A stretch of 64,000 nt of DNA, from NCBI GenBank assembly GCA_964247055.1, contig OZ176054.1, forward strand, positions 6,510,001-6,574,000, written 5' to 3'. The notes below the pieces were generated by a model. It did no database searches, was not told where the DNA came from, and saw only the letters and a list, made by a program, of their open reading frames with translations. Shown here one piece after another: positions 298 to 63,639 of the stretch. The stretch is from Paragordius varius (Eukaryota > Animalia > Nematomorpha). The position numbers were made by a program, and so were the translations under genes. Numbering within the stretch: the stretch's first letter is position 1; the number at the start of each line of letters is the position of its first letter.

Positions 298-3200
298 CTC
301 AATTTGCTTTTCAAGTGCATCCAATAGTGTTTGACATATATTAAGTGCTTGTTGACTATGTTGCTCAAACTTAGTACGTAAGGCTGATCTATGGATACAA
401 AAACAGTAAATATTTTAAATAAAGAAATAAATTATCATAGAGTCTATAAAAAATTTAAAAATCATAACAATCAATGTAAGTTAAGAGGTAATTTAAAATT
501 TATATGAGTAGAATTATTTATTTGACATACTTGTGTTCTTAAGATCTTCATTGTTAAAAAATGCAAATTTAGTATCATGTGTATTAAAAAATTAATTTAT
601 ATGACACGTTAATCAAAATGGTAGTTTTATCTATAAAAATACCATTTAATAAAAAATGAATTATTCATAAGTGAAAAATCTACTTTGATATGCATTCCTG
701 AAACCGTTGTTCGAATCGTTTAAACTCATTGTATCGTTCCTCAAAATTTTCCCCGAAAGTTGGTGAGCTGGTGCCAGTACCTTGCAACATATTTGTTCGA
801 TGATATGAGATGGAATCACCATGGCAACCATCGATATTAGCGCCATTATTTGCTGTTTTATACTTAGTTTTTGCATCAGCTAAAAGTCCAGAACTAGCTA
901 GACTGGAATCAAGCAAACGTTTTTCCAAAACCTCTTTTGCCGAAATGAAAAAGATACGATCCTTCGATTCTTGCGGGTTGGAAAGAACGCCAAGTTCATT
1001 CAACAAAAAGTGGGTTATGCGTTCCGTGTGTTGCTTAACCACCTTGTGTAGTAAAAATATATGGTTAAATATAATATTTGTATATGAGCAAAGGAATAGG
1101 ATGTAACAGTTAACGTATTATTAAAGTATAAATAACATTTGTTTGTTGGATGATGAAAAGATTATACAACTTGTTAATTATTAAAATATAATGCTCACCA
1201 CTTAGATAAAAAATCCTTATTATACATATATAATATATTATATACATGTATTAGGAATAATTATACGTTAAGTAGATTATAAAAAACTTGAGAGTTGCAA
1301 AAACAGTCATATTAATTAATTACAGTTGAGATATATTTCATATATATTGTAGTCGTTATAAAAGGATCCACAACTTTGTTAAAAAATTAGCTTTCACCCA
1401 TTTTAGGTAAACTTCTACACAATATTATCGGATTATTAGAATCGATAAAACAGCAAAAAAGTAAAACATTTTTAATAGTACATAAAGAAGATGACTCACT
1501 TTATCCGTATAAGCCTTGTCGAATTGGGTTGAGGCGTCCCATCGATTATTGAGGACAAAAACATTTGGGCGACTCAGTTTGCTTGCGACTTTGTGGAAAA
1601 AGTTTTTTTCCGTTTGCATAATGGTGGATTCGGCATTTGCTACAAGGATAAAAACATCGGCATCTTGACAATACTTATCAATCCAAGCATCAACATCCGG
1701 GTTCACATCAATGCCTAAGAAAGAAAGAAAGAAAAAATAAAAATTGGTAAAAAAAATTATTTATTTGTTGGAATAAATTATTTATATTTAGTGTTCCGAA
1801 AGGGAACTTGGTAAAAAAATAAAGATTGAACATCTATTATGCTTTATATATATATGATAGAAACGATTCTTAGTTATAACAGTATTATTTATTTAAAATT
1901 AATTAATTTTATACAATATAATTAACATCGGTTTATGATCATATTCACCAAAATTAACGCTTATTAGCGTAAAAATAAAATTATTTTATATGCCATGGTA
2001 TCAGATTAATGTTTAAAATCATACCATCTCTCAAAATATTATCTTCAAAATTATTTTATTTTATTTAATTGCTCAAAATTACTCTATTTATACCGCATTA
2101 AAAAGTCTAAAAAAATTATTTTTAAAATCAAATATTAAATCAACCTGGACTATCGACCAAGATAACGTCATCCCTTAAGAGGGGACATTTATATTTTGGC
2201 CAACACACATGTACTAATAGGTCTTGAGAAAGTTTGTCTGATGTCAAAGCATTCGCCAATTGTTCAACATTGGCGATACTTTCTTTAACGAAACCGGAAT
2301 TATTATTAAAACCATTATTATTGCTATTGCTATTACAAGAATCATTTTCGGCATAAATGTATGGTTCATCCGAGGAATTTGCGATTGTTTTATCAGAACT
2401 CTATGTAAAGTAGAATATTTGATGTGGTTTTCAAAAATAGCCTTCAAATATACTTTACAACATGTATTTAACCAAACATTCCATATTTTTAGTTTTCATA
2501 ATTTCAAAAGTTGAGTACTTTGTCTTAAAGGATACATGCGTATATATATATATATATTAAAAATTAATTACCATTACCCCATTTCCGATGCCTTCAACTT
2601 GAACGAAACAATTTGTGGTGTGACCTATGCCAGCTGGCAAAACCTTTTGTCCCAACATGGCATTGATAACGGTACTTTTTCCATTGCTAGTGCGACCGAA
2701 AAAGACAACCTAAAAAATTTTAAGCGTCATTTTATGAACATTAGAAATGTTTATATATAAGATTGTAAACCATAAAAATTTGAGCGGATTGTGGTTGCAT
2801 GACTTAAAAAATATTTTAGATTTTATTTTTTTTTAATGTTTCCATTTTTATTTTTTATTTAAAAATTATTTATGGTTTCATATATTTCACAGCCACTGTC
2901 ATAATACATTTGGAATAAATGAATAAATAAACAACAAACGGTATTATACTTTTCTATCTAAATAACATAGTAATCAAAACAGAAAACAATTTAAAAGACC
3001 GAAAAAATTAGATTAAATATTTGAAAAAAAAAGATTCTGTTTTCTGTAAATAAAGTATTTATTTAGAGACCTTCATGTGATTACGTCCCAATATTCCGAT
3101 GATCTTTTGCAATTTATCACCAGTTTGCGAATAAATATACTTTTCATCATTTGCTTCTGGCAAATTAATTTTATCAAAAGTCTTGAGTAAATAAATGATG

Positions 3201-7529: not shown

Positions 7530-8101
7530 TACTTGGATACAACACATTCATTTTAGTCCTTCGATTCAAATTGGGGTAGTTAAATACTCCAGGGGTGTTT
7601 AAAATTAAATTCTTTAAAAAATTACAGTAATCAAAACCATGGCAAAATTTTGCACTTATATAACATTAATAAACCAAAATATATAAAAAATTGTATTCAA
7701 AAATACTTGATATAACTTATTTTAAGCTAAAACTGAAAGGTAAAAATTTAGTCCACGTAACATGTGTGCAAGAGTAAAATTGAAAAATAATACAAAATAA
7801 TCCGCTTTATCGTTTTCTATCAATGTTAGATGTAATTTAAATAAATAATTAGCTTTAATTCTACCCTTAAAATTAAATGAAGACGCTATTAATATTTGCA
7901 AAATATAGATGGCGTCGAAGTAGTTGGACATTATACTTTTTTATCAAAACAAAATTTTATGTAGATATTTTGGCATATTTATATAATTTTTATCAGGTTA
8001 GAAGCATAAATTTAAATTGGGACCGATTCCTTCGGTAGTTTTTTTTAAAAATCCTAACTCTAATTATGGGGTATTTAGATATCCCAATTTGAATCGAAGT
8101 G
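7530..8101 (-). mobile_element. TTAA-associated piggyBac-like MITE, family A, copy 1 (reverse orientation)
   Basis: Ends ACTTGGATAC...CTTCGATTCAAATTGGGG and CCCAATTTGAATCGAAGTG followed by TTAA (8102-8105). Interior is homologous to copies at 8509, 12300 and 13516. Confidence 0.8.
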
Positions 8102-8508
8102 TTAAAGAGGACATGATATTTTTTATGGTGTAACCAAAAATTTGGACAATGAGTTAAAATAATATTGCATTACCTCTTTTTGGTAGTCCATTGTTATGTA
8201 ATTTAAATTCCTAAAAATTTATAAAATAAAAAACAGTATTTAACTTAAAAAATAAATATGTTGGGGTTCCAGACGCCGTATTTTAAGCGTTTGTTAATTT
8301 GTCATTATACAAATAATAATATTACCATTTTCATTCATTTTTATTTCATGCACGATAATGTTTTGAAATATTTTTATATTCCTAAGCTTTATCTTGATAA
8401 TTAACTAATGTTTAGAATTTTATTATCGAACATTGTTCTCCTGTCTTTTATTAAAAGCTCACATTTACAGTTTTTTAACTTCTAGAAAAAAAGACAGCTT
8501 CATATTAA

Positions 8509-15109: not shown

Positions 15110-23180
<8,071 letters not shown>

Positions 23181-25530: not shown

Positions 25531-28500
25531 TTAAGTTCGAACATTAAGTTGATCCTTTGTCTGTTCATAGTATTCTTGAGTACTTTGATCATTTGCAGCG
25601 TAATCCGTTTGATTCTCCGAGGCATAACTTTGTGATTGAGTGTTATTATAATCAGCAGGGGCATTGTCATAGGCATAAACGGGATTACTAAAATCTTGAC
25701 CACTGGCAATAGTTGAGGAATTCGTTAAAGATAACTGTTGAAGTTCTTGTCCATTTTGTAATTGCGTTGGAATATTTGCCATATCATTACCGATGGAAGA
25801 AATCCAGGGTGCCCACCACCAATTAGAGCACTGAGACCAGCGCTCGGCATTAACATTGTAATCCAGTTGCCTTTTACGGTACAATAGTATGGCTAACAGT
25901 AGAAAAATAAATTATAATATGGTTAAAAGTAAAATTTCTTCTAAAGGACAACCATACTTTTTAAACCTTGATGATCAAATAAACCTATCGTTTTGCATCG
26001 CAAAATGAGAAATAGTGTAATATTAGTTACATAATCATACATACATTTCATAATATTAATTATAGAGTTTAGGAAAATATCGTAAATTAAAAAATTATGG
26101 TTTTTTTCAATAATTTAACATTGTTGTTTGACTTCACTTTTACTTAAACGATTTAATATCTATTTAAGCAATCAACAAAATGCTTTTATTTAAACCAGGG
26201 GTGTCCAACACGAATGGCTTTGCAGGCCGCATTTTGCATCAAAAAATGTGAAGGGCCCCATTCGCGAAATATATGGACATTTGTTAATAGTTTATTAAAT
26301 TGCAAACATAATGTAAACACCTCTATTAACCTTTTTGATAATTGATTGCCAAAATCTAGATCAACTTATTCAGAAAATTTGTTCAAAAATCAATTTTATT
26401 TATTCATAAAATTTCTCGCGAACTGCATAAATAATTTTAAGGGCCTCATGTTGGACACCCCTGATTCAGAAATAAATGAAATACATAATTTGTAATACCT
26501 TCTTAAAAAAACATAAATGCTTAAGCTTATTCCTATGTGTAAAAATAGATAATTATTGATTAAAAATGCATAATGAAAATATGATTTATTTTTAGAGACT
26601 ATATTTTAAATTATATAATAATTGCCGCATATACAAGGTGTTTGTTTCTTTAAAATCGCAAAAATATTTACATGATCGCTCTATTGATAATATACATATA
26701 TATGTATAAAAAACGGTTTTTATATCCCTCACCTAATGTAGTGCAGACGAAAGCTATGGTACATATAGCTATGAGTAAAATCATATATGCCTGTTTATAT
26801 TCCTTATCACTTTTCGTATTTTGAAGCGCATTTAGTGTTCCTTTGGGATTACCATTGGATACAGTAGTGGTTGTTTTCTCAATCTTTACCTTTCCCACGG
26901 TTTTGAATCGGGTATTAAGGTCAGCCGGTGGTTCGGGAGGGGCGACAAACCTGGAACGATTACGTGGGAACAAATATTTTCCTTTATACACATCAAGGGC
27001 GTAGGAAGAACCACTAGTTCTTGGTTTCAAATCCGCAATCGTTGGTAAAATGATACAATGCCCATTTATGCAATATTTGCCCTTTCCTTTGCCGCATGCC
27101 ACACCATTCGGTAGAGAATGATTATAGTAATCGGATTTATCCGTCTAACAACAACATTGCAGAAGGATAATTGGAAAATAAAATTAATTAACTGGTGTGC
27201 AAAAGTACAAAATATAAATGTGATAATTATAAATTGTTGATTGATTTACATTATTTAATATTTATAGAGAAAAAATAATTTTTTTCTTATAATATTAATT
27301 TTACTAGGGAAATGTTTGCTCACATAACTTAACAATGCTTTTTTACCAAAGTAAAATTCAGAGCTTTAAATTTTTTAGGCCTACCGTGTACCATACCATT
27401 TCATAATCTAAAAATTAATTATTTAACAGAATTATTTCATATTCATACATGTTTGGGGTTTGATCTGAATTTACCTTTTTTGTGCATAAAAAACGACAAT
27501 TATCAGTGAATGAGTATTGCTTGGATTTACAATTATCGATTAACTCCTTTTTGTAATCTTTCTTTTGGGGACACTCTTTGTCCTACATCATCCACAATAA
27601 TTAGATAAAAGCAGTAATAAATAAACATTGTGATATAAAATATAAAAAATTAAAATTATACATAGACAAGACATAAAAAAATAATATATTATAATTTTTT
27701 ATTACCGCAGTACTTTTTAAACTTAATTGATTTTCTTAATGAAAATCATTAGTGCTAAACTGCAAAGGTTTCGTCGTTATAATTTCCATTTTTATTGCAA
27801 ATACAGTCTTCACATATATTATGGCTTATTCATATTATTTGGTCAATTTTACATACAGTAGCGTGTGTCATAAAACAATTGTTGTTCGTAATTAAATAAA
27901 CAACTTAATGGAAGTTGGGAAAAAATTGTTTACAAATTTGTTGTTGTTTTCCATACAATACTGTAGTACTGTCAATCGACCAACTACTATATATAATAAT
28001 TCATTCCTAAAGCAGATATATTACCGGGATACATGTAACAATTTTGATCTCAAAGAAATCTTTTCCACATCCCCGACCCCCGAAATTGGGTAAGGGCATA
28101 CTACACGTCCTAATCCATGTCATATGGGCGGCATCAAAACAGCTGTCACATTCAGAAAATGGTTTCCAATCACTCCAACCTCCATCCGTGATTGGTAACT
28201 TCAATTCCTTGGGACAAGGTTCACAAGTTTCATTGATACAAAAGGAAGGCATAGATGAACCACCACAATAACTTCCCTTAAATAAAGACATATAAAAGAA
28301 CCACTCATCCAAAATAATTATCTTGTCTCAAGGCCGATAAAAATTCTATAGCTATGAAAAAGCCGACTCAAAAAACCCATTATAGAATCCATATTTTTCT
28401 ATAGGATTCTGAAATTTTTAACGCTTAAAATGGTGACTCAAAATTTTGCTATTTCGACATTTAAGCCATAAAAAATTGGAGCCATACTTGAGCCGGCCTT

Positions 28501-31500
28501 CCACGAAATAGCTCTATAAAAGCTCTTGCACATGGCCTTTAAATTATGTCTTTGAAGCTGAATATTTTCCGGTTCTTATATACATATATTTATACATATA
28601 TAAACAATTTCCATAATTTTAATGAAAGATAATGGGATTCGTAAAATTACTCTTTAATCACGTGGAATAGGGCGTAAATATATGGAAAATAATTTCGTCA
28701 ATATTAAGACTTGGATTAAAATATTAATTTAAACTAATTCTGTCATTTCCATAAAGATGAAGTGTGGTCAAATGAAGAGAATGACATTATTTGTATAAAG
28801 TATAGTAAATTTTTCTCCTAAACCAAATTTAATAAAGTTTTTATGTTTTACTTATAACATCCATACCTCTAGTACCCTATCCATGTTGAATGTAGATATC
28901 TCGCCCAGGGAGGACACTCTAAAACATTGAGTACTTTTACAAGGGTCATAACCATTTTTATTGTTGACATAATTATCACTAGGATCAATCAATGCATAGG
29001 AACTTAAACCGTATTGTAGTTGACATTGTTCATGAAGTGTCACATTTATGCCGGATTGATTATAGAGACGGTAATTGTAACGTTGCGCCTTCAAAGCCCA
29101 TTTCCCCATACACCATTGATCGGCCAATTTTTCAGCCAATTGCTTTCTGCTACAAGCCGACCAAATTACGCCACCAGAATATGGCGCCATTATTCCATGC
29201 ACACTGATACATTCGGGAGTTTCATCGTGACTAAGGCCCATCCTGTTTTTTCCATTTGACACACAAAAAATAAATATTTGTGAAAAAAACAACAACTAAT
29301 TTTTCCTACGTTTTTAAATTGATTTAAGGTAATAATTTTTAAATAATTAAATAGCTAGATACACATTAAGATTAAAAAGATTGAAGGTTTGGAATTCGGC
29401 TTAGTATCTATATAAGCACCATTAAAAAAGGGATTGTAAAGTTAATATATGGTATTAGTGTATCAAATTTATTGAATAAACAAACATTTTTTTTATAAAT
29501 ACCGTTTTGTTTTGATTTTTATCAAAAGTGCCAATTAATTTTTAATTTTTTGTAATCTCATATTCTCCTTATAAAATAAATGTAAAATTTTCCATTGTGG
29601 TATAAACTTATGGCTATGCTGCAAGACTCTAGTTTTCCGATAAAATCGTTAGGTAAACCCTGTATTTTTATCACAGAAGCGAGATTTTGGTTTTAATAAA
29701 GTCAAGTACCATAGTTTTTCACGCCATCTCTATTTTTTGTCATTTACCAATACACCTTCGAAATGACCCCAATCATGGGAATAAGATAGGCATTATGTAA
29801 TAACAAATATTTTTAAATCTTTTTTCAAATTTATTTTTTAAATTTTTTTGGCATTATTATATATACTATAAAATTTTAATAATTTGATAATTTATTGTTT
29901 TTGGTTTTCATTATAATGGCAACAAAAAATAATTAAATAATAACACAGCATAATGGCAATGAAATCAGCATATACCGCTAATTATCAAAAATTTGTATAA
30001 CAAAACACTAGTAATAAGCCGTGGCGTTTGTATACTACTTATGCCTAAAATCTGGAGAAAAATTAATAACTAAAAAAAGAATCCTGACCGTTTTTAAAGC
30101 TGGAACGGCAGCATCTGACGGTATTTTAAATACTGTAATTATATTCCACCATACAATGAGATTTTTAGCGCCAAAGTAATTACCTCATGCTGATCTTCAT
30201 GCATGCACTTTTCCAATTTTAAAATCAGGTCCAAGTTTCTTATTACACTCATTATAAATTGATCATATCTTCCCACAGACATACCAGTTTGTGGGTATTT
30301 TGGAGTCCTCATAATGAGCTAATAAAAATCCCTAAATTCTCAAATTTTAGATTATAATTTATAGTATATGGAAAAGCTGAATATTAATCTTTGCAAATCA
30401 AGTTAATTAATTTTAATTTATTTATCTCAAAGTTTCCTGATCCTGACAGGTTTGGAGCTATGCATTTTTTTTCCACAATCGGGGATTGGTTAATATGAGG
30501 GGAATATGCAAAATATATATATAGTAACATTTATGCTAGCCATTTCACATTATTGCTGATGACCAATTGGTAAGACAATAACGTATGAGATATAAAGCAA
30601 ATTTTGTTCATAAAATCAAATGTTATAAGATAGGACGCAAATGTTTTCCACACATTTGTTGCTTTTTACTCATACACTACTGCGCTGCCAAATAGCCAAA
30701 AAATATGTAAATTGAGCAACATTAATGTGCATAATATATCCATCTATCTATATATATATATATATACATGTGTCCAATTTCATGGGCAACTGGTGAATCC
30801 GAAATAAAACCAACACCCCAACCTGCTTCAATGACGGCACATCCTCCCTTACAAATGCTATCTGAGTTGGCGCCACCCGCTAAAGCTGAACCCTCTGGGC
30901 CCCATAAATTGACCCTATTATATAATATTAATCACGATATTTTTTTATGAAATTGTTATAACGAAAAAAATATATTTGGTTTAAACCAGGGCTGATCAAC
31001 ACAAGCGGCTTCGCGTGCCGAATTCTGGATTTTATGTATCTGGCGGACTGAATTCGAAATATATTAGCGATTCCTATATATTGCATTAGATGTCAAACAT
31101 AAGAGTGTAAAGGAATTTATGAACACATATACTAAAATTTATTTGAAAAATTCCGTAAGTTCATGGCCATTTGGAAATACTCTGTTCAAAAAATTTGTTT
31201 ACGATTTTTTACTTATATTTTGTGAATAATATTTTTTATTACCAAATTGTACATTTGGTATTTTTTTATACTTCCCGCGCGCATATTGGACGGCGGTGTG
31301 GCGGACACCCCTGGTTTAAACTGTTTGAATTTTTATATAATGTGTTGTTTTGCTATTTAAATATATCTTTTTTATAATGACACAAACGTAAATTATACCA
31401 TTCTTAGGCAGTATTATTGGTTAATAATTGTAAAAAGTGAAAAGTCTATAAGCCAATAATAGTGCCCTTTGTTGTATTTACTATTTGTCACAAATTAATA

Positions 31501-34500
31501 AATTTTTAGCAATGTATACTTACCCATGCTGTAAATAGGATTTTTTGCGTTAAAGTGGTAAATAATATATATATATATATATAACAAAATTCAAAACGCT
31601 TGAAATTTTTTTACCCAGTAAATAAAACGTTTGCATCCCATGTAGAATTTTCTTTGAATAATTCATACATCAACTTGGTATATTGATAAAACTTATTAAG
31701 GTACTCCCTGGCATTTCCATCCGTTTGCATCATTTCGGGTTGATATGCCAGCAAAAAAATTTGGGTTATTGTTAAATCAATGAATTTTCTAATATAAAAA
31801 AAGAACATTTCGAAAATAACAGGACCAATTTTTTTAAATATCTGTGATCCAACTAAGTTGGAAATATTGTATTACAGTGTGAGTAAGTATACATTCCTAG
31901 AAAGTTATTAATTAATTATAATAGTATATACAACAAAGGGTAGTATTATTGGCTTATAGTTATTTTTTGCTTTTTACTATTATTGGCCAATACTGCCCTG
32001 AATTGTATTTACTATTTGGCAATAATTAATAACTTCCTAGCAATGTATACTTACTCATACTGGAAACTAATTTTTGTTTTCATTTTCTATATAGCATGCA
32101 ATCAATGAGCAGTAAATTAGTTGTTGCCCTATTTTGTGCTTTTTAACAATCTGTTAAAATCTTAATTCTTCCAGGGGCCACATCATATTTAGTCATAGAC
32201 TTATAAACAATAAAACAGTAAAATTCATATTCATAATAACTAGTTTAATTTAATTATACTCACAAAAATTAATTTATTAAATTTGGGTTACTGGCGCCCC
32301 CAAATCTCCCTATTATCAAATAATTTATGACATAAAATGATAATTGAATGTAATTTAAAATCCATGCAAATAAAATCAACCAAATTATAAAAACTATTTA
32401 AGTTTTAAACCATAGGTTAAACCTTCTTTTTGTTAAATATTAATATTTGTGGTTTTTAACAATCACATATGGTGCAAACCACAGAATAATTAATGTCTTA
32501 ACCTTCCGGATTTATTCTCTTCATTGAAAGCTATTTATTAGAAACGCTTTATATGTAATTTTTCATCGACTTTCAAAAAACCATAAAATATTTTTACACT
32601 GGATTACAAATTTTGACCTTTGTGTGCCATTTCCAAAGTTTTAATATTGTTTCATTTAAGCATACAATTATAAATTCAAAAAAATTGTCTATATCTTAAG
32701 AATTTAAGTTTTTTTTATATCTTTGGCCCTGATTTAGCATTAGATTCCAAATTTTCATAATAAAAGTTTCAACTCTTTCCCTAAGCTTCAAACATAGCAT
32801 GTTAATACGTCATCTTAACTAAATCGATGTGAAAGTTATTTGGTTACATGGGGTTAAATACTAAACTTTTAAATAATTTCAAATTTTCCTAGGCCAAGTA
32901 TTTGTAAAAATCTTATAAATTAACTAAATACATTAGGATTGCATTATTAAAATTTGAATATAAATTGTTGAAAAAAACTTTTAAATTTTATCAATAAAAT
33001 TATATTCCCTCACTAATATACTAAACAATTAAAAGTGAAATTTATTCCGTTTATGAAATGTTAAATCCTTAAAACTATAATTTAATTGCAATTTTGAATT
33101 TCGCCATATAAAAAATTAATAATAATAAAAGGTAATTTTTTAAAAATAAAAATAATATTTTTGACTGCTATAAAAAAACTATATAAAACCAATAAATAGG
33201 CGATTTAAACAAAATAACTCTCACGTTAAAAAACATTTTTTGAACAATGTTTCTATTTTTATTCATTAGTTTTGAAAATATATCTATGTACAAAAACTTT
33301 GTTTCATATCTATGATATTAAGCCCGAATAAAAACAGTTTTTAATAATATTTTAATTTTAGATTTACTGTTACTATGATCGCGAATGTCAAAAAATGCAA
33401 GAAACTCGAGTCGCACCAAAATGTGCCTAGTACATTTATCACATTAGTATTCTCTTTGATTAAAAATAATAACTTGGAGTTCCGTTTTTTTTGAAAATTA
33501 TTATTCCAAAATTAACAAAAAAATATAAAAATACCCAAGTGTGGGATGGTGATAAAAGGTATCAATTCGATTCATTAGAATGTAGATGTAGCGAATGGCA
33601 TTTTCCTCATTCCCCAAATTTATGATATCTTTGAAGGCATAAACATCCATATAAATTGCAAGATCGGCCGAATATGTCTTGTACCGAGAAATATTGTTTT
33701 CACTGTCTGATCTTTTAAGTTCATACTTACTATCATCTACATTAAATAAAAATAATTATACATTTAATAAAATTAACAAGGTTGATTTAATAATTAAATA
33801 TTGGCATCAGATGATATGTATAGTACTTAATCCCACAAAAAATAAACTGGTTCATTTGTGTTAAATATGATCACGTATTAAAAGGGTGAAAGGTGTGTAT
33901 ACAGGCCCCAGGTGCCATTTTAGCGGATCTTAAAATGATATTTTTATAATTTAATTTAAGTTTTTGCTTACTCTTTTCATTAATAAAGATGGGGAGTCAT
34001 CAAGGGTTTATTGGGCACAGCAAATATTCGCTTAGTCACTGAAAATAAGTTACTTGATTTAGCGCTTTTTTTCAAAATCCAAATTTTCGTTATAATATTT
34101 ACTATATTACAAAAGAAATTTTAGAGCAATATTTAAACATATCGCCAAAATCAAAAACTCTCCAAATACGCGCACTTTTGATTAAATATATTGGAATAAA
34201 AAAACTATTAGTTATCTTCATATTTTAGATGTGTGATTAGCTAACACCCCACTACTTTGATAGCGAAAAAGCTGAGGGCCTAAGCAGGGTTTTCACATAT
34301 ATGCTGAATTTTGCATTAAAAATTAGTTTTTCTCAAAAGCTAAAATAAATTTTAGATTCAATTTTAGCCCATGTCAAAGCATCACATTACTATTCAAAAA
34401 CGAAAGTTCTCGAGCCAATGCATTGTATTTTTTAAATTTTTTATGGGTGCAAAAATTTGAAGTTTTTTTGACAAATGGTTTTGAATAATAATTTTTAATA

Positions 34501-37464
34501 AAATGGCTCAACATAATTAAAAATGATATCAGTTATATAAGTAATCAGCTGTTTAACTAAGAAAAGACGTAAAGAACGCAGACCATTAGTTTTATACAGC
34601 CCATTTTGTTCATCTGACACCAAATATTAACACATAATCTCGCTAATAGTTAGCGTTTATTTTTATAATTCAGTAATGTCGGATGTTATGCGTGAAAACG
34701 ATCATGCATAGAAGAAAAGGGCATTTATAAATCATTGTTTGCTGGTTTAGACATGTGGTATTACTCCATCGATTAAAACATGTGAAACATGTATTTAGAA
34801 ATTGTGGTTTAAGTTTGAAAAGAGTGAGCACTCTGGCAACTGCGATGATGATACAGTGCAAGAGTTGTATCGGATGATGACTCAACTCAAACTCAGCGGG
34901 AATCGGTGGAGCCATTAAATAAATCAGAATAAAATCAGTGAATTTCTACGAATGAAGAAACTCAGTAAATAGGTCCTGCACAATTTGAATGAACGTCCGA
35001 TCGAAAATCTCAAAGTGACTTGTAAAACCAGATTCAAAGTCACGAAACGAAATTATTTTGACATCGAATTGTGACGAGTGATGAGAAATGGCTTTTTGTA
35101 AACCCAAGCCCGAAAAAATCGAGACTCTTGCCAAGCCAATCCATTTACACCGAGGCCAAATCGCTTGGTAAACGCCATGCTCTGTGACAGTTGTCAAGGC
35201 GATAATGTGCACTATGAACCTTTCAAACCCGGTGAAACTGTTGATCTCGTAAGCGATCGCATAATTTAAACAATAAATTAATCGAAAAACATGGGAATTA
35301 GCCAGAACAAATAGAAATTTTGCTACATGACAGTGATCCGTCTAACGAGGCAAAACCACTGGAAGACACATGTTTTGTCCGCCGAACTTTACTGAGCATC
35401 TGAATCATAAATCAATTGGGCTAACCCTTGTAGAGCAGCAGCTTAATAATCTTGAAGACTTGGGTTTGTCACAAAAGACAATCATTTTTCTTTGGCCTTC
35501 ATACACTCTCTGAGAGATGGGCGAAAAGTTAGAAACCGATGGACAATATTTTCAATAAAATTAATAATTTTTTTCCTTTCAATATTACAAGTACTTTTTA
35601 TCAAAACGGGCAAAAATTTTAACAAAATCAACCTAATATATTAGTTAGCCTGTCCATTCGCACATAGGTTTTGCTGCCAAACACCTTACATAAGCGAGTT
35701 TATTAAAGATAAAGCTTTTTAAATTTAAATGATAAAATTAAGAGTTATTTATGTGATAATGTTATACAGCTGAATATTAATATTAAATTTTATGTGCAAA
35801 AAAATTGTAATACTTAGAATCATATAAAACGTTCTTTATTATAAAAAAACTTATAAAAAATCACATTCGCTATTGCACCAAGAAAAATTTAATATTTGAC
35901 TTGGGTTTTCTATAAAAAATCAAACTCATTGTGCTAAGTTTTTTCCTTACGATTAAAGAATCATGATAAATCTGATATATAATTTTGTACACTATGTTGT
36001 GTCTTAATTACAATTTTACAAAGTGTATATATAATATTTTACTTTATGTGTAAATACCTAGACTGGTAAGGAAATCATTAAATTCAAAGTGTTTATATGG
36101 CTGTTTTACTTTTTCCCAGCACATTTGAAATTGAGCACCATCGCTATGTAAGGGTTTAATGTGAAAGTTTCCTTTGGACGTTGTGATGACCAAATCCTGT
36201 AAATAAATTATTAGTTAAAGGCAAAGATTGAGCAGAGTCGCAGCTAAGGGAGGAAAGGGGGCTAATGCAACGGGCGCCATGGTTGAAGGGGTGCCGGATT
36301 TTAAAGGTATTTGAAAGTTATAATTTTAAATAATACATAAAAAATCACCCATTTATGAGTACGGTTTGAATTATTTTTTTAAATGCAAGGGGTTTCATGG
36401 AGAGGGAGGCGAGCATTAGAAATGCAAGCTATGCCTTCGAGACTGGGGCTATCGCATTTTTATTATGTTTTCATTGGCTTAAATGCTGCATGTTTATATT
36501 ATAGTTATGAACTGATATATTTGAAATATATGAAACACAAAAATCTACACAAGAAACTTTAAAGCTGGATAAATCATAATTATAAGTGGGCTTTTAATCT
36601 AATTAGCCTCATTGTGAAATTTATTTAAGCGCTCCCTACTTTGTAAACAAAAGATTGCAATTATATTTAAATATCTGTTTGGTTAAATTTTACATTTTTA
36701 ATATTATAGTTTATTTTAATTTTTTTAAAATAGTTTTAAGTTTATGACTAGTATTTTTAAAACTGATACCATTCATCATTAATGACTTCACACCTAGTTT
36801 GACGCAACCCTAACAAGGTTTGGATTGGTTGCGCTAAAAAATGTTATGGAGAATTTTACCAAGTAAGTAGGTTCCACTGTCACAGAAATCAAAGATTCAT
36901 TCGTGATTTGAACAATTTTAATATTATTATCATCCTGTTGGTGAGTCGTAATGTAAATTGAGTATGGTTGATATGTTTGACCTTGCATGAAACATGGGGC
37001 ATTTTCTTGATCGATGGTTCGATATAAATTTGTTTTCTCGTGATTTACCACGTATACAAAATCATGTTTGGGTGTTGTTGGATTTGATCGTAATAATCGT
37101 GATGATTTTGGCCAAAGAGACAAGGTGATGTAGGGTATGGGCTGATATTTATCAGGGTATGAAAACAAAAATTTTTCGGTGTTAACTAACGTAACGTTAA
37201 TTCTAATGGGTCGGGATGGATTTATTATTTTGCGGTTACATAATTTGGGATGCCACATGACACCGGACCAAATGTGTGGGGAGAGGGGTGAACTCTTGAG
37301 AGCTATATCATTCCAACTGATTTCAACCTGTTGGCAATCTTAACACTTTTTATTATAGACAAAAAATTAATTTTACTCGTTTGGTCAATTCTTGACCCGT
37401 CATTCCTTTTCGATCCTACGAATCTGATCCAAATTGTTAGATACATAAATATAATAAAGTGCAT
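25531..37464 (-). CDS. Membrane-anchored ADAMTS-like zinc metalloprotease (M12B), ~912 aa. Exons: 37464-37377, 37338-36860, 36196-36058, 33736-33535, 31788-31615, 30914-30768, 29242-28867, 28276-28025, 27582-27475, 27144-26733, 25892-25531
   Basis: Signal-like MHFIIFMYLTIWIRFVGS; prodomain (APCFMQGQ, KGNFHIKPL); ELKR/S processing site; zinc motif HEIGHMMGLSHD split across two exons; Met-turn GIMAP; Cys-rich module; TSP1 DGGWSDWKPFSECDSC...RTCSMPLPNFGGRGC; second Cys-rich module (PNGVACG...CINGHC); TM AYMILLIAICTIAFVCTTLAILL followed by YRKR. The 5' exon junction is less certain. Confidence 0.88.
26196..26463. mobile_element. hAT-type MITE (268 bp)
   Basis: TIR CAGGGGTGTCCAACA / TGTTGGACACCCCTG; degenerate 8-bp flanks ATTTAAAC / ATTCAGAA. 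Confidence 0.85.
30987..31313. mobile_element. hAT-type MITE (327 bp)
   Basis: Ends CAGGGCTGATCAACAC and GTGGCGGACACCCCTG; perfect 8-bp TSD GTTTAAAC (30979-30986 and 31314-31321). Confidence 0.9.
31405..31531. mobile_element. Partial copy of palindromic CAGT-ended MITE
   Basis: GCAGTATTATTGG...GCCAATAATAGTGCCCTTTGTTGTATTTACTATTTG...GCAATGTATACTTACCCATGCTG matches 31875-32062. Confidence 0.7.
31875..32062. mobile_element. Palindromic MITE (Tc1/mariner/pogo-like ends, probable TA target)
   Basis: CAGTGTGAGTAAGTATACATTCCTAGAAAGTTATT pairs with AATAACTTCCTAGCAATGTATACTTACTCATACTG; homologs at 31405 and 46478. Confidence 0.8.
34525..35640 (+). mobile_element. Decayed mariner (Mos1-like, DD34D) transposon; transposase pseudogene ~34676-35558
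   Basis: Frameshifted motifs SIKTCE, DDDSTQTQRE, HRIVTSDEKW, TPRPNR, HYEPFKPGETVD, LHD, ERW...TDGQYFQ* are collinear with Mos1. Right end AATCAACCTAATA-TA. Left boundary approximate. Confidence 0.88.
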
Positions 37465-37703
37465 ATAACGTGTTTATCGTAATAGAAACATTTGGGTTCT
37501 ATTATAATTAAAAATCGTTAAAAACTTTGTTTAAATTTAATATATATATTTTATTTTATAATGGCATTTTAAATTATTTATTATGATTTGCTGATCTAGC
37601 CTAATCTATATGGTTTATTCACAAAATACTTTGTTTATGACTTAATTACCTAACCATTTTTTTATACACAGTGCATATTAAAAGTATATGTCCAATATGC
37701 TCA

Positions 37704-37706
<3 letters not shown>

Positions 37707-37740
<34 letters not shown>
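37707..37740. repeat. (TA)n microsatellite
   Basis: About 17 uninterrupted TA units. Similar tracts lie near 17918-17945, 30748-30766, 41176-41200, 52926-52949 and 60757-60788. Confidence 0.9.
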
Positions 37741-37743
<3 letters not shown>

Positions 37744-40700
37744 CCAAATAAAACCGCAAAAGTAATATGGCAGTAAAAGCTTAAGGCTTAAGCCAAATTA
37801 TTATTTGATTATATATTATAACTTATTTAAATAAAAAATTTAATGTATTTTATAATTTTGGAGGATCTTAAAAACAAATAGCCCACGACTTTGTAAAAAA
37901 GGATGCTTTGTTTTAAATTAAATTTCAAAAATATAGTTGAACTTTATGGTATTTTAAACATATTAGAAATTGACTAATGTAATTAATACTTAACATAGTT
38001 AAATTACAAAGATGTTTCGATCATGTCATAATTCTGATTAAAATGCCCGCTTATTCTAATTATTAGGTTAAATTATTACAATATTTAAATTTTTTAAAAA
38101 CATATATGCCAAATGGGTAATTATATTCAGCGGCATTTGATTCTGTCAAAAAGTTTTATTAAAATATTTTAAAATTTTTTAGCCTGCCTTTATTCATTTT
38201 AACTTAAATCTATAATATATAAGAAATAACTATCATGCCCTCAATTTCAAAATTTCCTGTTAAAATTTTGTATTTTACTCCAAATGCAATGTCCCGCTTC
38301 TGAATGATGTGTTGCTTTTTTTCCTAAAATTAAATATAAAATCTACATTTTGCCCAATTGCCGCCTTACTTTTTATTATCTTTTTGAGAAGTTTACCCCT
38401 TGGCTGTTTACTAGAAAATAGCTATGCTTTTAAGCCGAAACTAAAAAATATGGGGTGGACTTTTAGACCCATTATAAAAAATATATTAAAATGTATAAAA
38501 GTCCTTATCTCGATTGTCACCAATTTTTTACATTTAGGGTAATAGCTAACTGGTAATAAAATGTTTCATGGTATAAAATTAATTAACATAATGGTTTGGA
38601 TAATTATATTGAAAGCAAAATAATCAATTCATAATATAAAAATCACCTGTTTGTTTCAATTTGAGTGCTTATATTTCTACTGAAACTTACTAATAAAAAT
38701 AAATGCTTTTATATTATATTAATATACAAGTTAAATGTTTGATAATAATCATATTTTGGTAAAATATTTATAAGTAATATATTTTATTACAAACATTGTG
38801 CTATTCAAGATTTTCCATATAAAAATTAAAATAATGAAGTGATAAAGACGACGGTTTAGACTGCCGGAACTAATTGATGACGGTATTTTTAAAAAATTTA
38901 AATATATATATAGAGAGAATATTGTAAATAAGTTAAGAAAATTAAATCATGTTTATTTTATTGCATAATTTAATAAATCAACTATATTATTCCGATAATC
39001 TAATACATTCGGGGTCAAGAAGGATGTCCAAAGCACATAAATTAGTCATATATATATATTTTTAAAGACGGTAATATTTTAAATTTACATTTAATTTATT
39101 TGCTACTAGAAGAATACAAAAGAAAATAAATTTTGAATAATAATTAGTTAAGTTAACCAAGGAACAAACAAATTAATATATGCAAATATATGCCAAAAAA
39201 CAGAATATCTTGATTAAATCATCGGTCGGTCGGTCTTACGGACTGCAAAAATTACATAATATTACCAAACATAATTTTTTACATTTTTTATACCATTATT
39301 GATGATAATAAGATGCGCAAATCAAAATCCTCTCGTTGGCGTATATCAGCAAAAAACAAAAGAAAAAAAACCGTATAAATATTTTCCTTTATGCCGCAAT
39401 CAGATCCGGTTCGATTTCTTTTGAAAGGTGAAACCTCCTTGCATAATTTACTCTTTTTTAAAAATTAAATGTTGTGTAACAAAATTATTTTTATACTTCT
39501 CTGATATAATTTATATATGTATATGCATACAAAAATAATGCAACAAAAACGTATCATAGAGATCATCATTAGGAAGGAAGATAAGCTTTGACACATAATA
39601 AATATATATATAATCGTAATTATTAGGAATTCTTACCTTAAGTATTTCAATAAAACACTTTAAAAATTGTATTAAGTTTTAGTTAACTTTTGAAAATATA
39701 AAATTAAAGTGAGGAAGATTGATTAAATTGTAAATTATAAGGTATATATAATAAACATTAGTTATATGTATTTTGCTAATGTATATAAATGCAATTGAAA
39801 TCATCTTATAATTTATAATAAATAATCTTTCCTGATAATGAATAATTTAATGATAATCAATTTTATTGTTTTAAAAAGAATTCTTTTCATAAGAGGGAAG
39901 TGCTTCTTTTGTAACTTATACTAATGTCACAAGTATAGGTTTTAAAGGTTACATATATTTGTTAATATACTTTTTTTTGTGTGATAAAAAATAATTTTGC
40001 CATCAAGATAGTTTTCTTTAAAATTAATTATTAAAAATTAAGGAACGAACCTTCATTAATTTTATATTGTGCTAAATAAAATTTCTGTTTTAAAATATCA
40101 TAATGTAGATATAATGGCAAAATATTGAACTCTATGTACTAAGTATTTTTATGTTCCGTTTATGATGGGTTGATATTTTTTTCTTATTCTGAGAGTATAT
40201 GATTTTTTATTCTAAAATTTCATTCAAAAATATCAAATTACCATTGATTTCGCATCGTACCAACCTAAATATATTATGCTCCTTTTGCTATAAGGAATTT
40301 TTTGGTTCGTGAAAAGAGAAAAATCTTAGTTTAAAATATTCCAATCGCAAAAATACTCCCATGATGTATATTTTGTAAAATTATCAAAGTTAAAATGTAA
40401 ATATTATAAATCAAAATATTAAATCGTGGACCTAAGGTGTTTTTATAACTTGACATAAAAATTTAAAATTACTAAAATATTGTTTTTAACCAATACATTC
40501 AAATCTATAATGACCCCCAAAATTTTTGAAATTAAGTCCATTAGATATAACATTTTCAATTGGTTATATTACTTATACAAACGTGCTTTTGTCCGTGACC
40601 GTGAACGATTTATAAAATAACCAGCGTGAGTTAATCATATGTTTAAATTTTAACAAAAATCCATATCACAAGTGTTCAATCGTAAATTTTAATCATCACT

Positions 40701-62684: not shown

Positions 62685-63444
62685 CTAAGCTGAATTGTTT
62701 TCTATTTTTACTTTAGGATGAATTCTGCACACTGGTAAGCATAAAATAAATTGCAAATTAGACATTTCCAAAAATGAGTGAATAAATAATACTCTAAGTG
62801 TTGACAATCCGGTACATTCTTCTGATTGCGATTCAACTGTGGAACTGATCAAATCCTCTTTAATTAGTGCCCTAGCTTTAGCCGATAACCGTTTTTTCGG
62901 ATTGATTGAAGTATTTGAATCTTGAGAATTATTTTTCTTTCGTTTTCGTTCGTTAGATGAAGTAGTAGAAATAGTCGTGTTTGATTTTCTACCTCTGCCA
63001 CATTTAAGTTTTTTATCAGTGTCCGAGGTATCTTGTGGAATAGAGCTGCATTTAGTATTTAAGTGATGTTGAACTGATTCGTTGTTGCTAATCAAAGTGT
63101 GATGATCTGGATTTTGATATCCTTGATATACGTTATCTTGGCTATCATAATTGTAATTAATTATATCAATTTCAATAAGTCGATCATTATCGTCATAGAG
63201 ATGTGAAAATGATGTATTTTGCCTCGGTTGTTTAACGACTTTATTTTGATAATTTGTATTATTGGGTCTGTTGTTATCTTTAGTGTCAGAATCAATATCT
63301 TCCCCCTTTTCAGGGTGTTGAAGGGAAGCTGGAGGTTTTTTACGCCGCGGTTGATACTTATAATCAGGATGCTCTTTTTTGTGAACTTTTCGCAAACGTT
63401 CGGCCTCTTCAATGAACGGTATGCGATCTTTTTCATCCAACAAT
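62685..63444 (-). CDS. SoxE: SoxE-group HMG-box transcription factor (Sox8/9/10, Sox100B-like): exon with the C-terminal half of the HMG box; upstream exon lies beyond the window end
   Basis: Acceptor TTTGTAG at 63445 in phase 2, at the usual mid-HMG intron site, then (R)[36 protein letters not shown]. [14 protein letters not shown] is characteristic of SoxE. The true 3' end of this exon is uncertain. Confidence 0.9.
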
Positions 63445-63639
63445 CTACAAACATTAAGGAATAATTTAATTACCATAAAACCAAAAAAAAGCTTAATAGT
63501 TTTAGGTTAACTTCTTTCCCGTTTTCAAATTGTTCTTGTTTATTTTATTTATTGTCCAAATATTTTGCATATTTTACTCTTAAATTCTATACATAACTTT
63601 TTATAAAATATAATCGTTACAAAATACACTGGTTTTAAT

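What the first reader, a model, noticed from the sequence alone, without database searches (positions are those of the whole stretch)
25531..37464. ADAMTS-type protease with a transmembrane anchor (ADAM/ADAMTS hybrid architecture)
Seen: signal peptide, prodomain, intact HEIGHMMGLSHD, Cys-rich module, one TSP1 repeat, second Cys-rich module, basic Thr-rich stalk, 23-aa hydrophobic helix with a YRKR stop-transfer, and a ~115-aa tail. Established: ADAMTS enzymes are secreted and lack TM helices, while ADAMs have a TM but no TSP1. Inference: a type I membrane ADAMTS-like sheddase or matrix protease, possibly lineage-specific. The TM is split over two exons with matching phase 1, which argues against a chance fusion.
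Basis: partly seen in the sequence, partly recalled or inferred. Interest (0 to 1): 0.75.

Follow-up and report, generated by a model that had tools for sequence, protein, structure and literature searches.

The report
Membrane-anchored ADAMTS-type protease gene
An intact 11-exon gene in this AT-rich invertebrate genome encodes an ADAMTS-type zinc protease that, unlike described ADAMTS enzymes, ends in a membrane-spanning helix and a cytoplasmic tail; two sister genes share the design, so it looks real, though no RNA evidence exists, and it is a modest variation on a well-known family.

Summary
On the minus strand, 11 GT-AG exons (37464 to 25531) sum to 2739 nt, which is 912 codons plus a stop, and every splice phase fits.

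Profiles built exon by exon from this gene and two sister genes match solved structures in the same order as an ADAMTS enzyme:
- zinc-site exon: ADAMTS5, ADAMTS1, ADAMTS4
- next exon: ADAMTS13 catalytic end plus disintegrin-like domain
- next exon: thrombospondin-1 repeats (E 2e-17)

The ADAMTS spacer domain and the ADAM disintegrin and Cys-rich domains are absent here. All three are detected elsewhere in the same genome.

One exon runs without a break from the end of the second Cys-rich module through a stalk into 19 hydrophobic residues. This is the only stretch above the usual transmembrane threshold. The next exon completes the helix in phase 1 and adds RKR and a 115-residue tail.

A sister gene about 35 kb away has the same split and phase, with 65% identity just inside the membrane. 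A third gene on another contig carries stalk, helix, basic stop and tail in one exon.

I found no relatives or papers describing a natural membrane ADAMTS. RNA evidence and a database-wide architecture search are missing. Verdict: a real new variant of a known kind, of moderate interest.

The parts
37377..37464 (-). Exon 1: start codon and putative signal peptide; ends in phase 1
   Evidence: First ATG after an upstream stop. Hydrophobic core scores KD11 2.4. The donor position is shared with the sister gene.
37339..37376 (-). Intron 1: a 38-nt GT-AG intron
   Evidence: The sister gene has a 35-nt intron at the same place and phase, with conserved ends.
36860..37338 (-). Exon 2: prodomain (no Pfam family detected)
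   Evidence: Frame and phase. 32% identity to the sister gene. No Pfam hit.
36058..36196 (-). Exon 3: end of prodomain, with a single Cys (36119-36121) as a possible cysteine switch
   Evidence: Splice sites. The sister gene has an equivalent segment containing a Cys.
33535..33736 (-). Exon 4: conserved dibasic KR (33711-33716) and the start of the catalytic domain
   Evidence: 75% identity over 44 residues to the sister gene. Weak but collinear ADAMTS4 match.
31615..31788 (-). Exon 5: middle of the catalytic domain
   Evidence: Profile matches ADAMTS5 residues 48-103, E 0.04, immediately before the exon 6 match.
30768..30914 (-). Exon 6: catalytic domain up to HEIGH and the first two bases of the Met codon
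   Evidence: Profile matches ADAMTS5 at E 1.3e-5, then ADAMTS1 and ADAMTS4, then snake-venom reprolysins; ADAM33 scores only 0.1.
28867..29242 (-). Exon 7: third zinc His and Asp, Met-turn, and ADAMTS disintegrin-like domain
   Evidence: Profile matches the ADAMTS13 MDTCS chain, residues 153-260, E 4.8e-5. Pfam ADAMTS_CR_2 scores E 0.008 here and 1.9e-4 in the sister gene.
28025..28276 (-). Exon 8: end of the disintegrin-like domain plus one thrombospondin type 1 repeat (about 28031-28183)
   Evidence: Profile matches thrombospondin-1 repeats at E 2.2e-17 and ADAMTS13 at 3.7e-7. It also matches canonical ADAMTS exons of the same genome.
27475..27582 (-). Exon 8b: first half of the second Cys-rich module (4 Cys)
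   Evidence: Phase 0 at both ends. The Cys pattern parallels the single-exon module of the third gene.
26733..27144 (-). Exon 9: end of the Cys-rich module, about 85-residue stalk, and first 19 residues of the membrane helix (26787-26733); ends in phase 1
   Evidence: Pfam Adt-1-like domain, E 2.6e-4. KD19 is 2.38, the only segment of the gene above 1.6. It is one uninterrupted reading frame.
25531..25892 (-). Exon 10: completes the helix (25892-25879), RKR stop-transfer (25878-25870), conserved Trp-rich juxtamembrane block, NPVY (25675-25686), 115-residue tail, and stop
   Evidence: Phase 1 acceptor. 65% identity over 34 residues to the sister gene. This exon is found only in these two genes genome-wide.

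Best explanation
This is a real, intact gene for a type I membrane-anchored zinc metalloprotease of the ADAMTS kind.

Shown: the order of parts is hydrophobic N-terminus, prodomain, conserved dibasic site, reprolysin-type catalytic domain with a complete zinc site, ADAMTS disintegrin-like domain, one thrombospondin repeat, a second Cys-rich module, a short stalk, one membrane helix with a basic stop-transfer, and a 115-residue tail.

Inferred:
- The protein enters the secretory pathway.
- It is activated by a convertase at the dibasic site.
- It sits in the plasma or an endosomal membrane with the protease outside.
- It cuts matrix or cell-surface proteins close to its own cell, much as ADAMs and membrane-type MMPs do.
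- The spacer domain that guides soluble ADAMTS enzymes to substrates is replaced by membrane tethering.
- The conserved Trp-rich block just inside the membrane, and the Tyr-rich tail, probably bind sorting or regulatory partners.

The design arose from an ADAMTS ancestor. It is old within this lineage and is kept in at least three genes.
For: Gene model:
- 11 GT-AG exons sum to 2739 nt, with all phases compatible.

Family assignment, from exon-wise profiles of the three genes against solved structures:
- TSR exon to thrombospondin-1, E 2.2e-17, and to ADAMTS13, E 3.7e-7.
- Exon 7 to ADAMTS13, E 4.8e-5.
- Zinc-site exon to ADAMTS5, ADAMTS1 and ADAMTS4 ahead of ADAM33.
- Exon 5 is collinear on ADAMTS5.
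- ADAMTS_CR_2 and Adt-1-like Pfam hits fall at the same places in both neighbouring genes.

Membrane anchor:
- The Cys-rich end, the stalk and 19 hydrophobic residues share one exon, so no splice is needed to join the ADAMTS part to the helix.
- KD19 is 2.38, the only peak in the protein.
- The sister gene at G000:C5:6582121-6589603 has the same phase 1 split four codons before Y-R-(K/R)-R.
- That gene is 65% identical in the juxtamembrane block, although its synonymous sites are saturated.
- The third gene at C4:10058001-10067000 has the zinc motif split at the same phase and ADAMTS_CR_2 at 42.7 bits, above the cut-off.
- Its single last exon carries stalk, helix (KD19 3.36), RKK and a Tyr-rich tail.
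Against: - No RNA or protein data were available.
- SignalP, DeepTMHMM and InterPro were not run, because the spliced protein was deliberately not assembled.
- Single exons stay below Pfam gathering scores.
- The second Cys-rich module has only weak support.
- The prodomain matches no family.
- The catalytic domain has fewer Cys than usual for ADAMTS.
- The dibasic site lacks the Arg at P4 that furin prefers.
- No relative was found in any other organism, so conservation rests on paralogues within one genome.
Confidence: 0.75

Rival explanations
1. The membrane form is only a precursor or a minor isoform. The working enzyme would then be soluble, released by cleavage in the basic stalk or produced by alternative 3' processing, so in practice it would behave as an ordinary secreted short ADAMTS.
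For: The stalk is basic, about 85 residues long and poorly conserved apart from one Pro-rich block.
Against: The juxtamembrane cytoplasmic block is the second-best conserved part of the protein, which argues that the anchored form has a function. Read-through of the exon 9 donor would still leave the hydrophobic stretch in the product.
Confidence: 0.12
2. The gene model is an artefact: the helix and tail exons belong to another transcript, and the ADAMTS gene ends earlier.
For: There is no RNA evidence. The last intron is about 840 nt. AT-rich non-coding DNA often translates into hydrophobic runs (one search shows many).
Against: The first 19 helix residues lie in the same exon as the Cys-rich end. 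The same phase 1 split and the same order occur in the sister gene. The tail exon occurs only downstream of these two genes. The third gene repeats the layout.
Confidence: 0.05
3. It descends from an ADAM that gained a thrombospondin repeat, not from an ADAMTS that gained an anchor.
For: It has a membrane helix plus a cytoplasmic tail, as ADAMs do. Snake-venom and ADAM catalytic domains also match the zinc-site exon, but more weakly.
Against: The best matches are ADAMTS5, 1, 4 and 13. The domain after the catalytic one is the ADAMTS type. Disintegrin and ADAM_CR models hit only other loci, chiefly the true ADAM gene at C7:2.29-2.30 Mb, and none of these three genes.
Confidence: 0.04
4. It is a decaying or non-catalytic copy (pseudogene or pseudoprotease).
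For: It is very divergent. One exon found nothing real among 1.84 billion representatives. Earlier notes report dead-site ADAMTS-like genes elsewhere in this genome.
Against: There are no frame breaks in 912 codons. The zinc motif and Met-turn are complete in all three genes. Amino-acid identity of 32-60% persists although synonymous sites are saturated.
Confidence: 0.04

Closest known systems
ADAMTS proteases (e.g. human ADAMTS5, ADAMTS13; C. elegans ADT-1)
   Same: Reprolysin-type catalytic domain with the full zinc motif and Met-turn, ADAMTS-type disintegrin-like domain, central thrombospondin repeat and a following Cys-rich module, in that order.
   Different: There is no spacer domain, although that model finds 13 other genes in this genome. 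There are no C-terminal repeats. The protein ends in a membrane helix and cytoplasmic tail, whereas the family is described as secreted only (abstract of PMC4133867).
ADAM proteases (e.g. ADAM10, ADAM17, ADAM33)
   Same: Type I membrane topology, with an M12B catalytic domain outside and a cytoplasmic tail. The likely mode of action is cleavage close to the cell surface.
   Different: There is no disintegrin domain, no ADAM Cys-rich domain and no EGF module. It has a thrombospondin repeat. The catalytic exon matches ADAMTS better than ADAM33.
Membrane-type matrix metalloproteinases (e.g. MMP14)
   Same: A soluble matrix-protease family in which some members carry a stalk, a single helix and a short tail that confine activity to the cell surface. 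This is the closest functional analogy (my own knowledge).
   Different: It belongs to a different metzincin family (M10, not M12B), with hemopexin rather than repeat and Cys-rich ancillary domains. There is no sequence relationship in the anchor.
Other ADAMTS-type genes of the same genome (canonical gene at C4:8.04 Mb; 12-copy array at C2:1.30-1.42 Mb)
   Same: They share the disintegrin-like, repeat and Cys-rich exons at low identity.
   Different: Those genes carry the spacer. No helix followed by a basic stop was found in the stretches I fetched.

Membership tests
ADAMTS | Reprolysin (M12B) catalytic domain with HExxHxxGxxHD and a Met-turn | tested here: met
   The motif is read directly across exons 6 and 7. 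Profiles match ADAMTS5, ADAMTS1 and ADAMTS4 and ADAMTS13. The Pfam Reprolysin model itself did not reach these short exons.
ADAMTS | ADAMTS-type disintegrin-like domain directly after the catalytic domain | tested here: met
   ADAMTS_CR_2 scores E 0.008 here, 1.9e-4 in the sister gene, and 42.7 bits (over the cut-off) in the third gene. The ADAMTS13 match spans it.
ADAMTS | Central thrombospondin type 1 repeat | tested here: met
   The three-gene profile matches thrombospondin-1 repeats at E 2.2e-17. Pfam TSP_1 alone did not report the single exon.
ADAMTS | Cys-rich domain after the repeat | tested here: inconclusive
   Adt-1-like domain scores E 2.6e-4 and 2.5e-3, below the cut-off. There is no solved-structure match. 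Seven Cys lie in the expected place.
ADAMTS | Spacer domain | tested here: not met
   ADAMTS_spacer1 finds the 12-copy array and the canonical gene, but nothing at the three anchored genes at E up to 10.
ADAMTS | Secreted, with no membrane-spanning segment | tested here: not met
   A 23-residue hydrophobic segment is followed by RKR and a 115-residue tail. The same holds in two sister genes. Hydropathy only; no dedicated predictor was available.
ADAMTS | Signal peptide and prodomain with a convertase site | tested here: inconclusive
   There is a hydrophobic N-terminal core and a conserved KR about 17 residues before the first catalytic strand in all three genes. There is no Pfam propeptide hit, and SignalP was not available.
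ADAM | Disintegrin domain, ADAM Cys-rich domain and EGF-like module | tested here: not met
   PF00200 and PF08516 hit only other loci, chiefly the ADAM gene at C7:2.29-2.30 Mb, and none of the three genes here. No such hits appeared in the exon scans.
ADAM | Type I membrane helix and cytoplasmic tail | tested here: met
   The tail has no Pfam family and no Pro-rich SH3-type motifs were noted.

The most novel reading that the evidence does not exclude
An old, lineage-restricted clade of type I membrane ADAMTS enzymes. Tethering would replace the spacer as the way of choosing substrates. A conserved Trp-rich cytoplasmic block would link the protease to sorting or signalling machinery. That would be a third independent route, after ADAMs and membrane-type MMPs, by which metzincins became cell-surface proteases.
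Probability: 0.4. Interest if true: 0.6.

Novelty: new variant of a known kind. Interest (0 to 1): 0.45.

Why it matters
Reviews define ADAMTS enzymes as secreted, and membrane anchoring is the textbook line between them and ADAMs. A natural anchored ADAMTS, kept in three old paralogues, shows that this line is not absolute.

It also offers a natural experiment on what the spacer domain does, and on how tethering changes substrate choice. The only anchored ADAMTS I found in the literature is an engineered ADAMTS13.

The finding adds to signs that this lineage has remodelled its matrix proteases. Earlier scan notes report pseudoprotease and shortened forms, and both those notes and my own searches show a 12-copy array.

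It does not open a new mechanism, because domain shuffling of this kind is common in invertebrate genomes.

Tried and rejected
- Pfam on single exons gave only sub-threshold hits.
- One exon was searched against 1.84 billion representatives. The single hit was a repetitive protein, which I judged spurious.
- The same exon alone against solved structures found nothing. Three-gene profiles were needed to get matches.
- Two metagenome scans, with the juxtamembrane block and with exon 4, found no relative.
- The ESM Atlas search on the tail gave no usable hit.
- An exact look-up of an exon 2 ORF found nothing on record.
- Literature: the phrase search for membrane-bound or transmembrane ADAMTS returned only an engineered ADAMTS13. 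Two Drosophila ADAMTS papers mention 'transmembrane' only for other proteins.
- A hydropathy scan for further anchored members in ten other ADAMTS-type loci and the ADAM locus found none in the fetched ranges.
- dN/dS was not informative because synonymous sites are saturated.
- Its length window excludes full-length relatives of any single exon.
- The contig is not human: about 27% GC, invertebrate gene content.

Full report
WHAT IS THERE

The window is G000:C5:6510001-6574000 of a 110.6-Mb, 44-contig assembly with about 27% GC. It is not human.

On the minus strand between 37464 and 25531, stop-to-stop frames and codon tables give 11 coding exons with GT-AG borders:
- 37464-37377
- 37338-36860
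- 36196-36058
- 33736-33535
- 31788-31615
- 30914-30768
- 29242-28867
- 28276-28025
- 27582-27475
- 27144-26733
- 25892-25531

Their lengths sum to 2739 nt, which is 912 codons plus a stop, and the phase of each donor fits the next acceptor.

All searches were done exon by exon, by reference. The joined-protein steps (InterPro, SignalP, DeepTMHMM, folding of whole domains) were left out.

A SISTER GENE FIXES THE MODEL

A translated comparison with the DNA beyond the window end found a collinear paralogue on the plus strand at C5:6582121-6589603. It is head-to-head with this gene and about 35 kb away.

The two genes share several intron positions and phases:
- a very short first intron (38 nt here, 35 nt there) with conserved ends;
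- the split of the zinc motif;
- the phase 1 split inside the hydrophobic helix, four codons before Y-R-(K/R)-R.

Amino-acid identity per exon runs from 32% to 60%. It peaks at 75% over 44 residues at the start of the catalytic domain, and reaches 65% over 34 residues just inside the membrane. Synonymous differences are saturated (pS 0.65-0.96). The duplication is therefore old, and both copies, tail included, have been kept by selection.

FAMILY ASSIGNMENT

Single exons are too short and too divergent for ordinary searches:
- Pfam gives only sub-threshold ADAMTS_CR_2 and Adt-1-like hits, though at the same places in both genes.
- One exon found nothing real among 1.84 billion representatives.
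- The same exon found nothing among solved structures.

Scans of the genome itself with Pfam models show a normal ADAMTS repertoire elsewhere:
- a canonical gene at C4:8.04 Mb;
- a 12-copy array at C2:1.30-1.42 Mb;
- several shorter genes.

Comparing my exons with six-frame segments of those loci revealed a third relative at C4:10058001-10067000. Its ADAMTS_CR_2 score (42.7 bits) passes the curated cut-off.

Exon-wise profiles of the three genes then matched solved structures clearly, and in the right order:
- exon 5 matches ADAMTS5 residues 48-103;
- exon 6 matches ADAMTS5 residues 106-151 at E 1.3e-5, ahead of ADAMTS1, ADAMTS4 and snake-venom enzymes, with ADAM33 only at 0.1;
- exon 7 matches ADAMTS13 residues 153-260 at E 4.8e-5;
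- exon 8 matches thrombospondin-1 repeats at E 2.2e-17 and ADAMTS13 at 3.7e-7.

The module after the repeat is supported only weakly. The spacer model finds 13 other genes but none of these three. The ADAM disintegrin and Cys-rich models hit none of the three genes; their hits lie elsewhere, chiefly at the true ADAM gene at C7:2.29-2.30 Mb. This is therefore an ADAMTS-derived ectodomain without a spacer.

THE ANCHOR

Exon 9 is one open frame. It runs from the end of the Cys-rich module through an approximately 85-residue basic, Thr-rich stalk into 19 hydrophobic residues. No splice is needed to connect the ADAMTS part to the helix.

That stretch has a 19-residue Kyte-Doolittle mean of 2.38. 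It is the only one in the protein above the classical 1.6 threshold. Exon 10 adds Ala (the split codon), four more hydrophobic residues, RKR and 115 further residues. These include a Trp-rich conserved block and an NPVY motif.

The sister gene scores 1.79 for its helix and has RRR after it. In the third gene, one exon carries a Ser/Thr-rich stalk, a helix scoring 3.36, RKK and a Tyr-rich acidic tail. It is joined to the Cys-rich exon in matching phase.

The tail exon occurs nowhere else in the genome. A short stalk motif is shared by this gene and the third gene, which suggests a single origin for the anchored layout.

HOW IT LIKELY WORKS

Shown:
- an intact reading frame;
- a complete zinc site and Met-turn in all three genes;
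- the ADAMTS order of domains;
- a single C-terminal helix with positive charges on the tail side.

Inferred:
- entry into the secretory pathway through the hydrophobic N-terminus;
- activation at the conserved dibasic site about 17 residues before the first catalytic strand;
- a type I orientation with the protease outside;
- cleavage of matrix or surface proteins near the cell, with tethering standing in for the missing spacer;
- sorting or regulation through the conserved cytoplasmic block.

Release of a soluble ectodomain by stalk cleavage is possible and untested.

COMPARISON AND NOVELTY

Reviews describe ADAMTS enzymes as secreted only (abstract of PMC4133867). A phrase search of about 8.4 million papers for membrane-bound, membrane-anchored or transmembrane ADAMTS returned only an engineered ADAMTS13.

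I found no relatives in the representative library, in two metagenome scans or in the ESM Atlas.

Other agents of this scan take the genome for a horsehair worm (Nematomorpha), citing its mitochondrial genome among other evidence. I did not test that. I saw only that the arthropod cuticle-protein domain is not detected, although that search had no positive control in any genome, and that a published hairworm assembly is much larger.

VERDICT

This is a new variant of a known kind. It is real and tidy, and of moderate interest until RNA data and a cross-species survey exist.

Noticed in passing
G000:C4:10058001-10067000 (L007), plus strand: A third ADAMTS-type gene with a membrane anchor. Its zinc motif is split at the same phase. 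It has an above-threshold disintegrin-like domain and a repeat with a long insertion. A single last exon (L007:6928-7461) carries stalk, helix, RKK and a Tyr-rich tail.
   Followed up: partly
window 37339-37376, and L003 around 8096-8130: The first intron is very short: 38 nt here and 35 nt in the sister gene, next to kb-scale later introns. This fits the short 5' intron class that other notes report for this genome.
   Followed up: partly
window 34673-35341, minus strand: Two adjoining open frames of 131 and 91 codons lie inside intron 3, in a stretch of raised GC. They match no Pfam family and are absent from the sister gene. They may be transposon debris.
   Followed up: partly
G000:C2:1302000-1423000: About twelve tandem ADAMTS-type genes at a spacing of roughly 10 kb, each with a strong spacer-domain exon. 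The scan has already noted this array.
   Followed up: no
window 30725-30767 and 37690-37745: TA dinucleotide runs. One begins exactly at the donor site after the zinc-site exon, so the donor GT is the start of a microsatellite.
   Followed up: no
window 62688-63506 (minus), 683-1760 (minus), 19569-19886 (plus): Neighbouring genes: a SoxE-like HMG-box gene, a mitofusin-like GTPase and dihydrolipoamide dehydrogenase exons. I named them from their translations only.
   Followed up: no
window 25675-25686: An NPxY-type motif in the cytoplasmic tail of this gene. I did not notice one in the sister gene's tail. It could be an endocytic signal.
   Followed up: no
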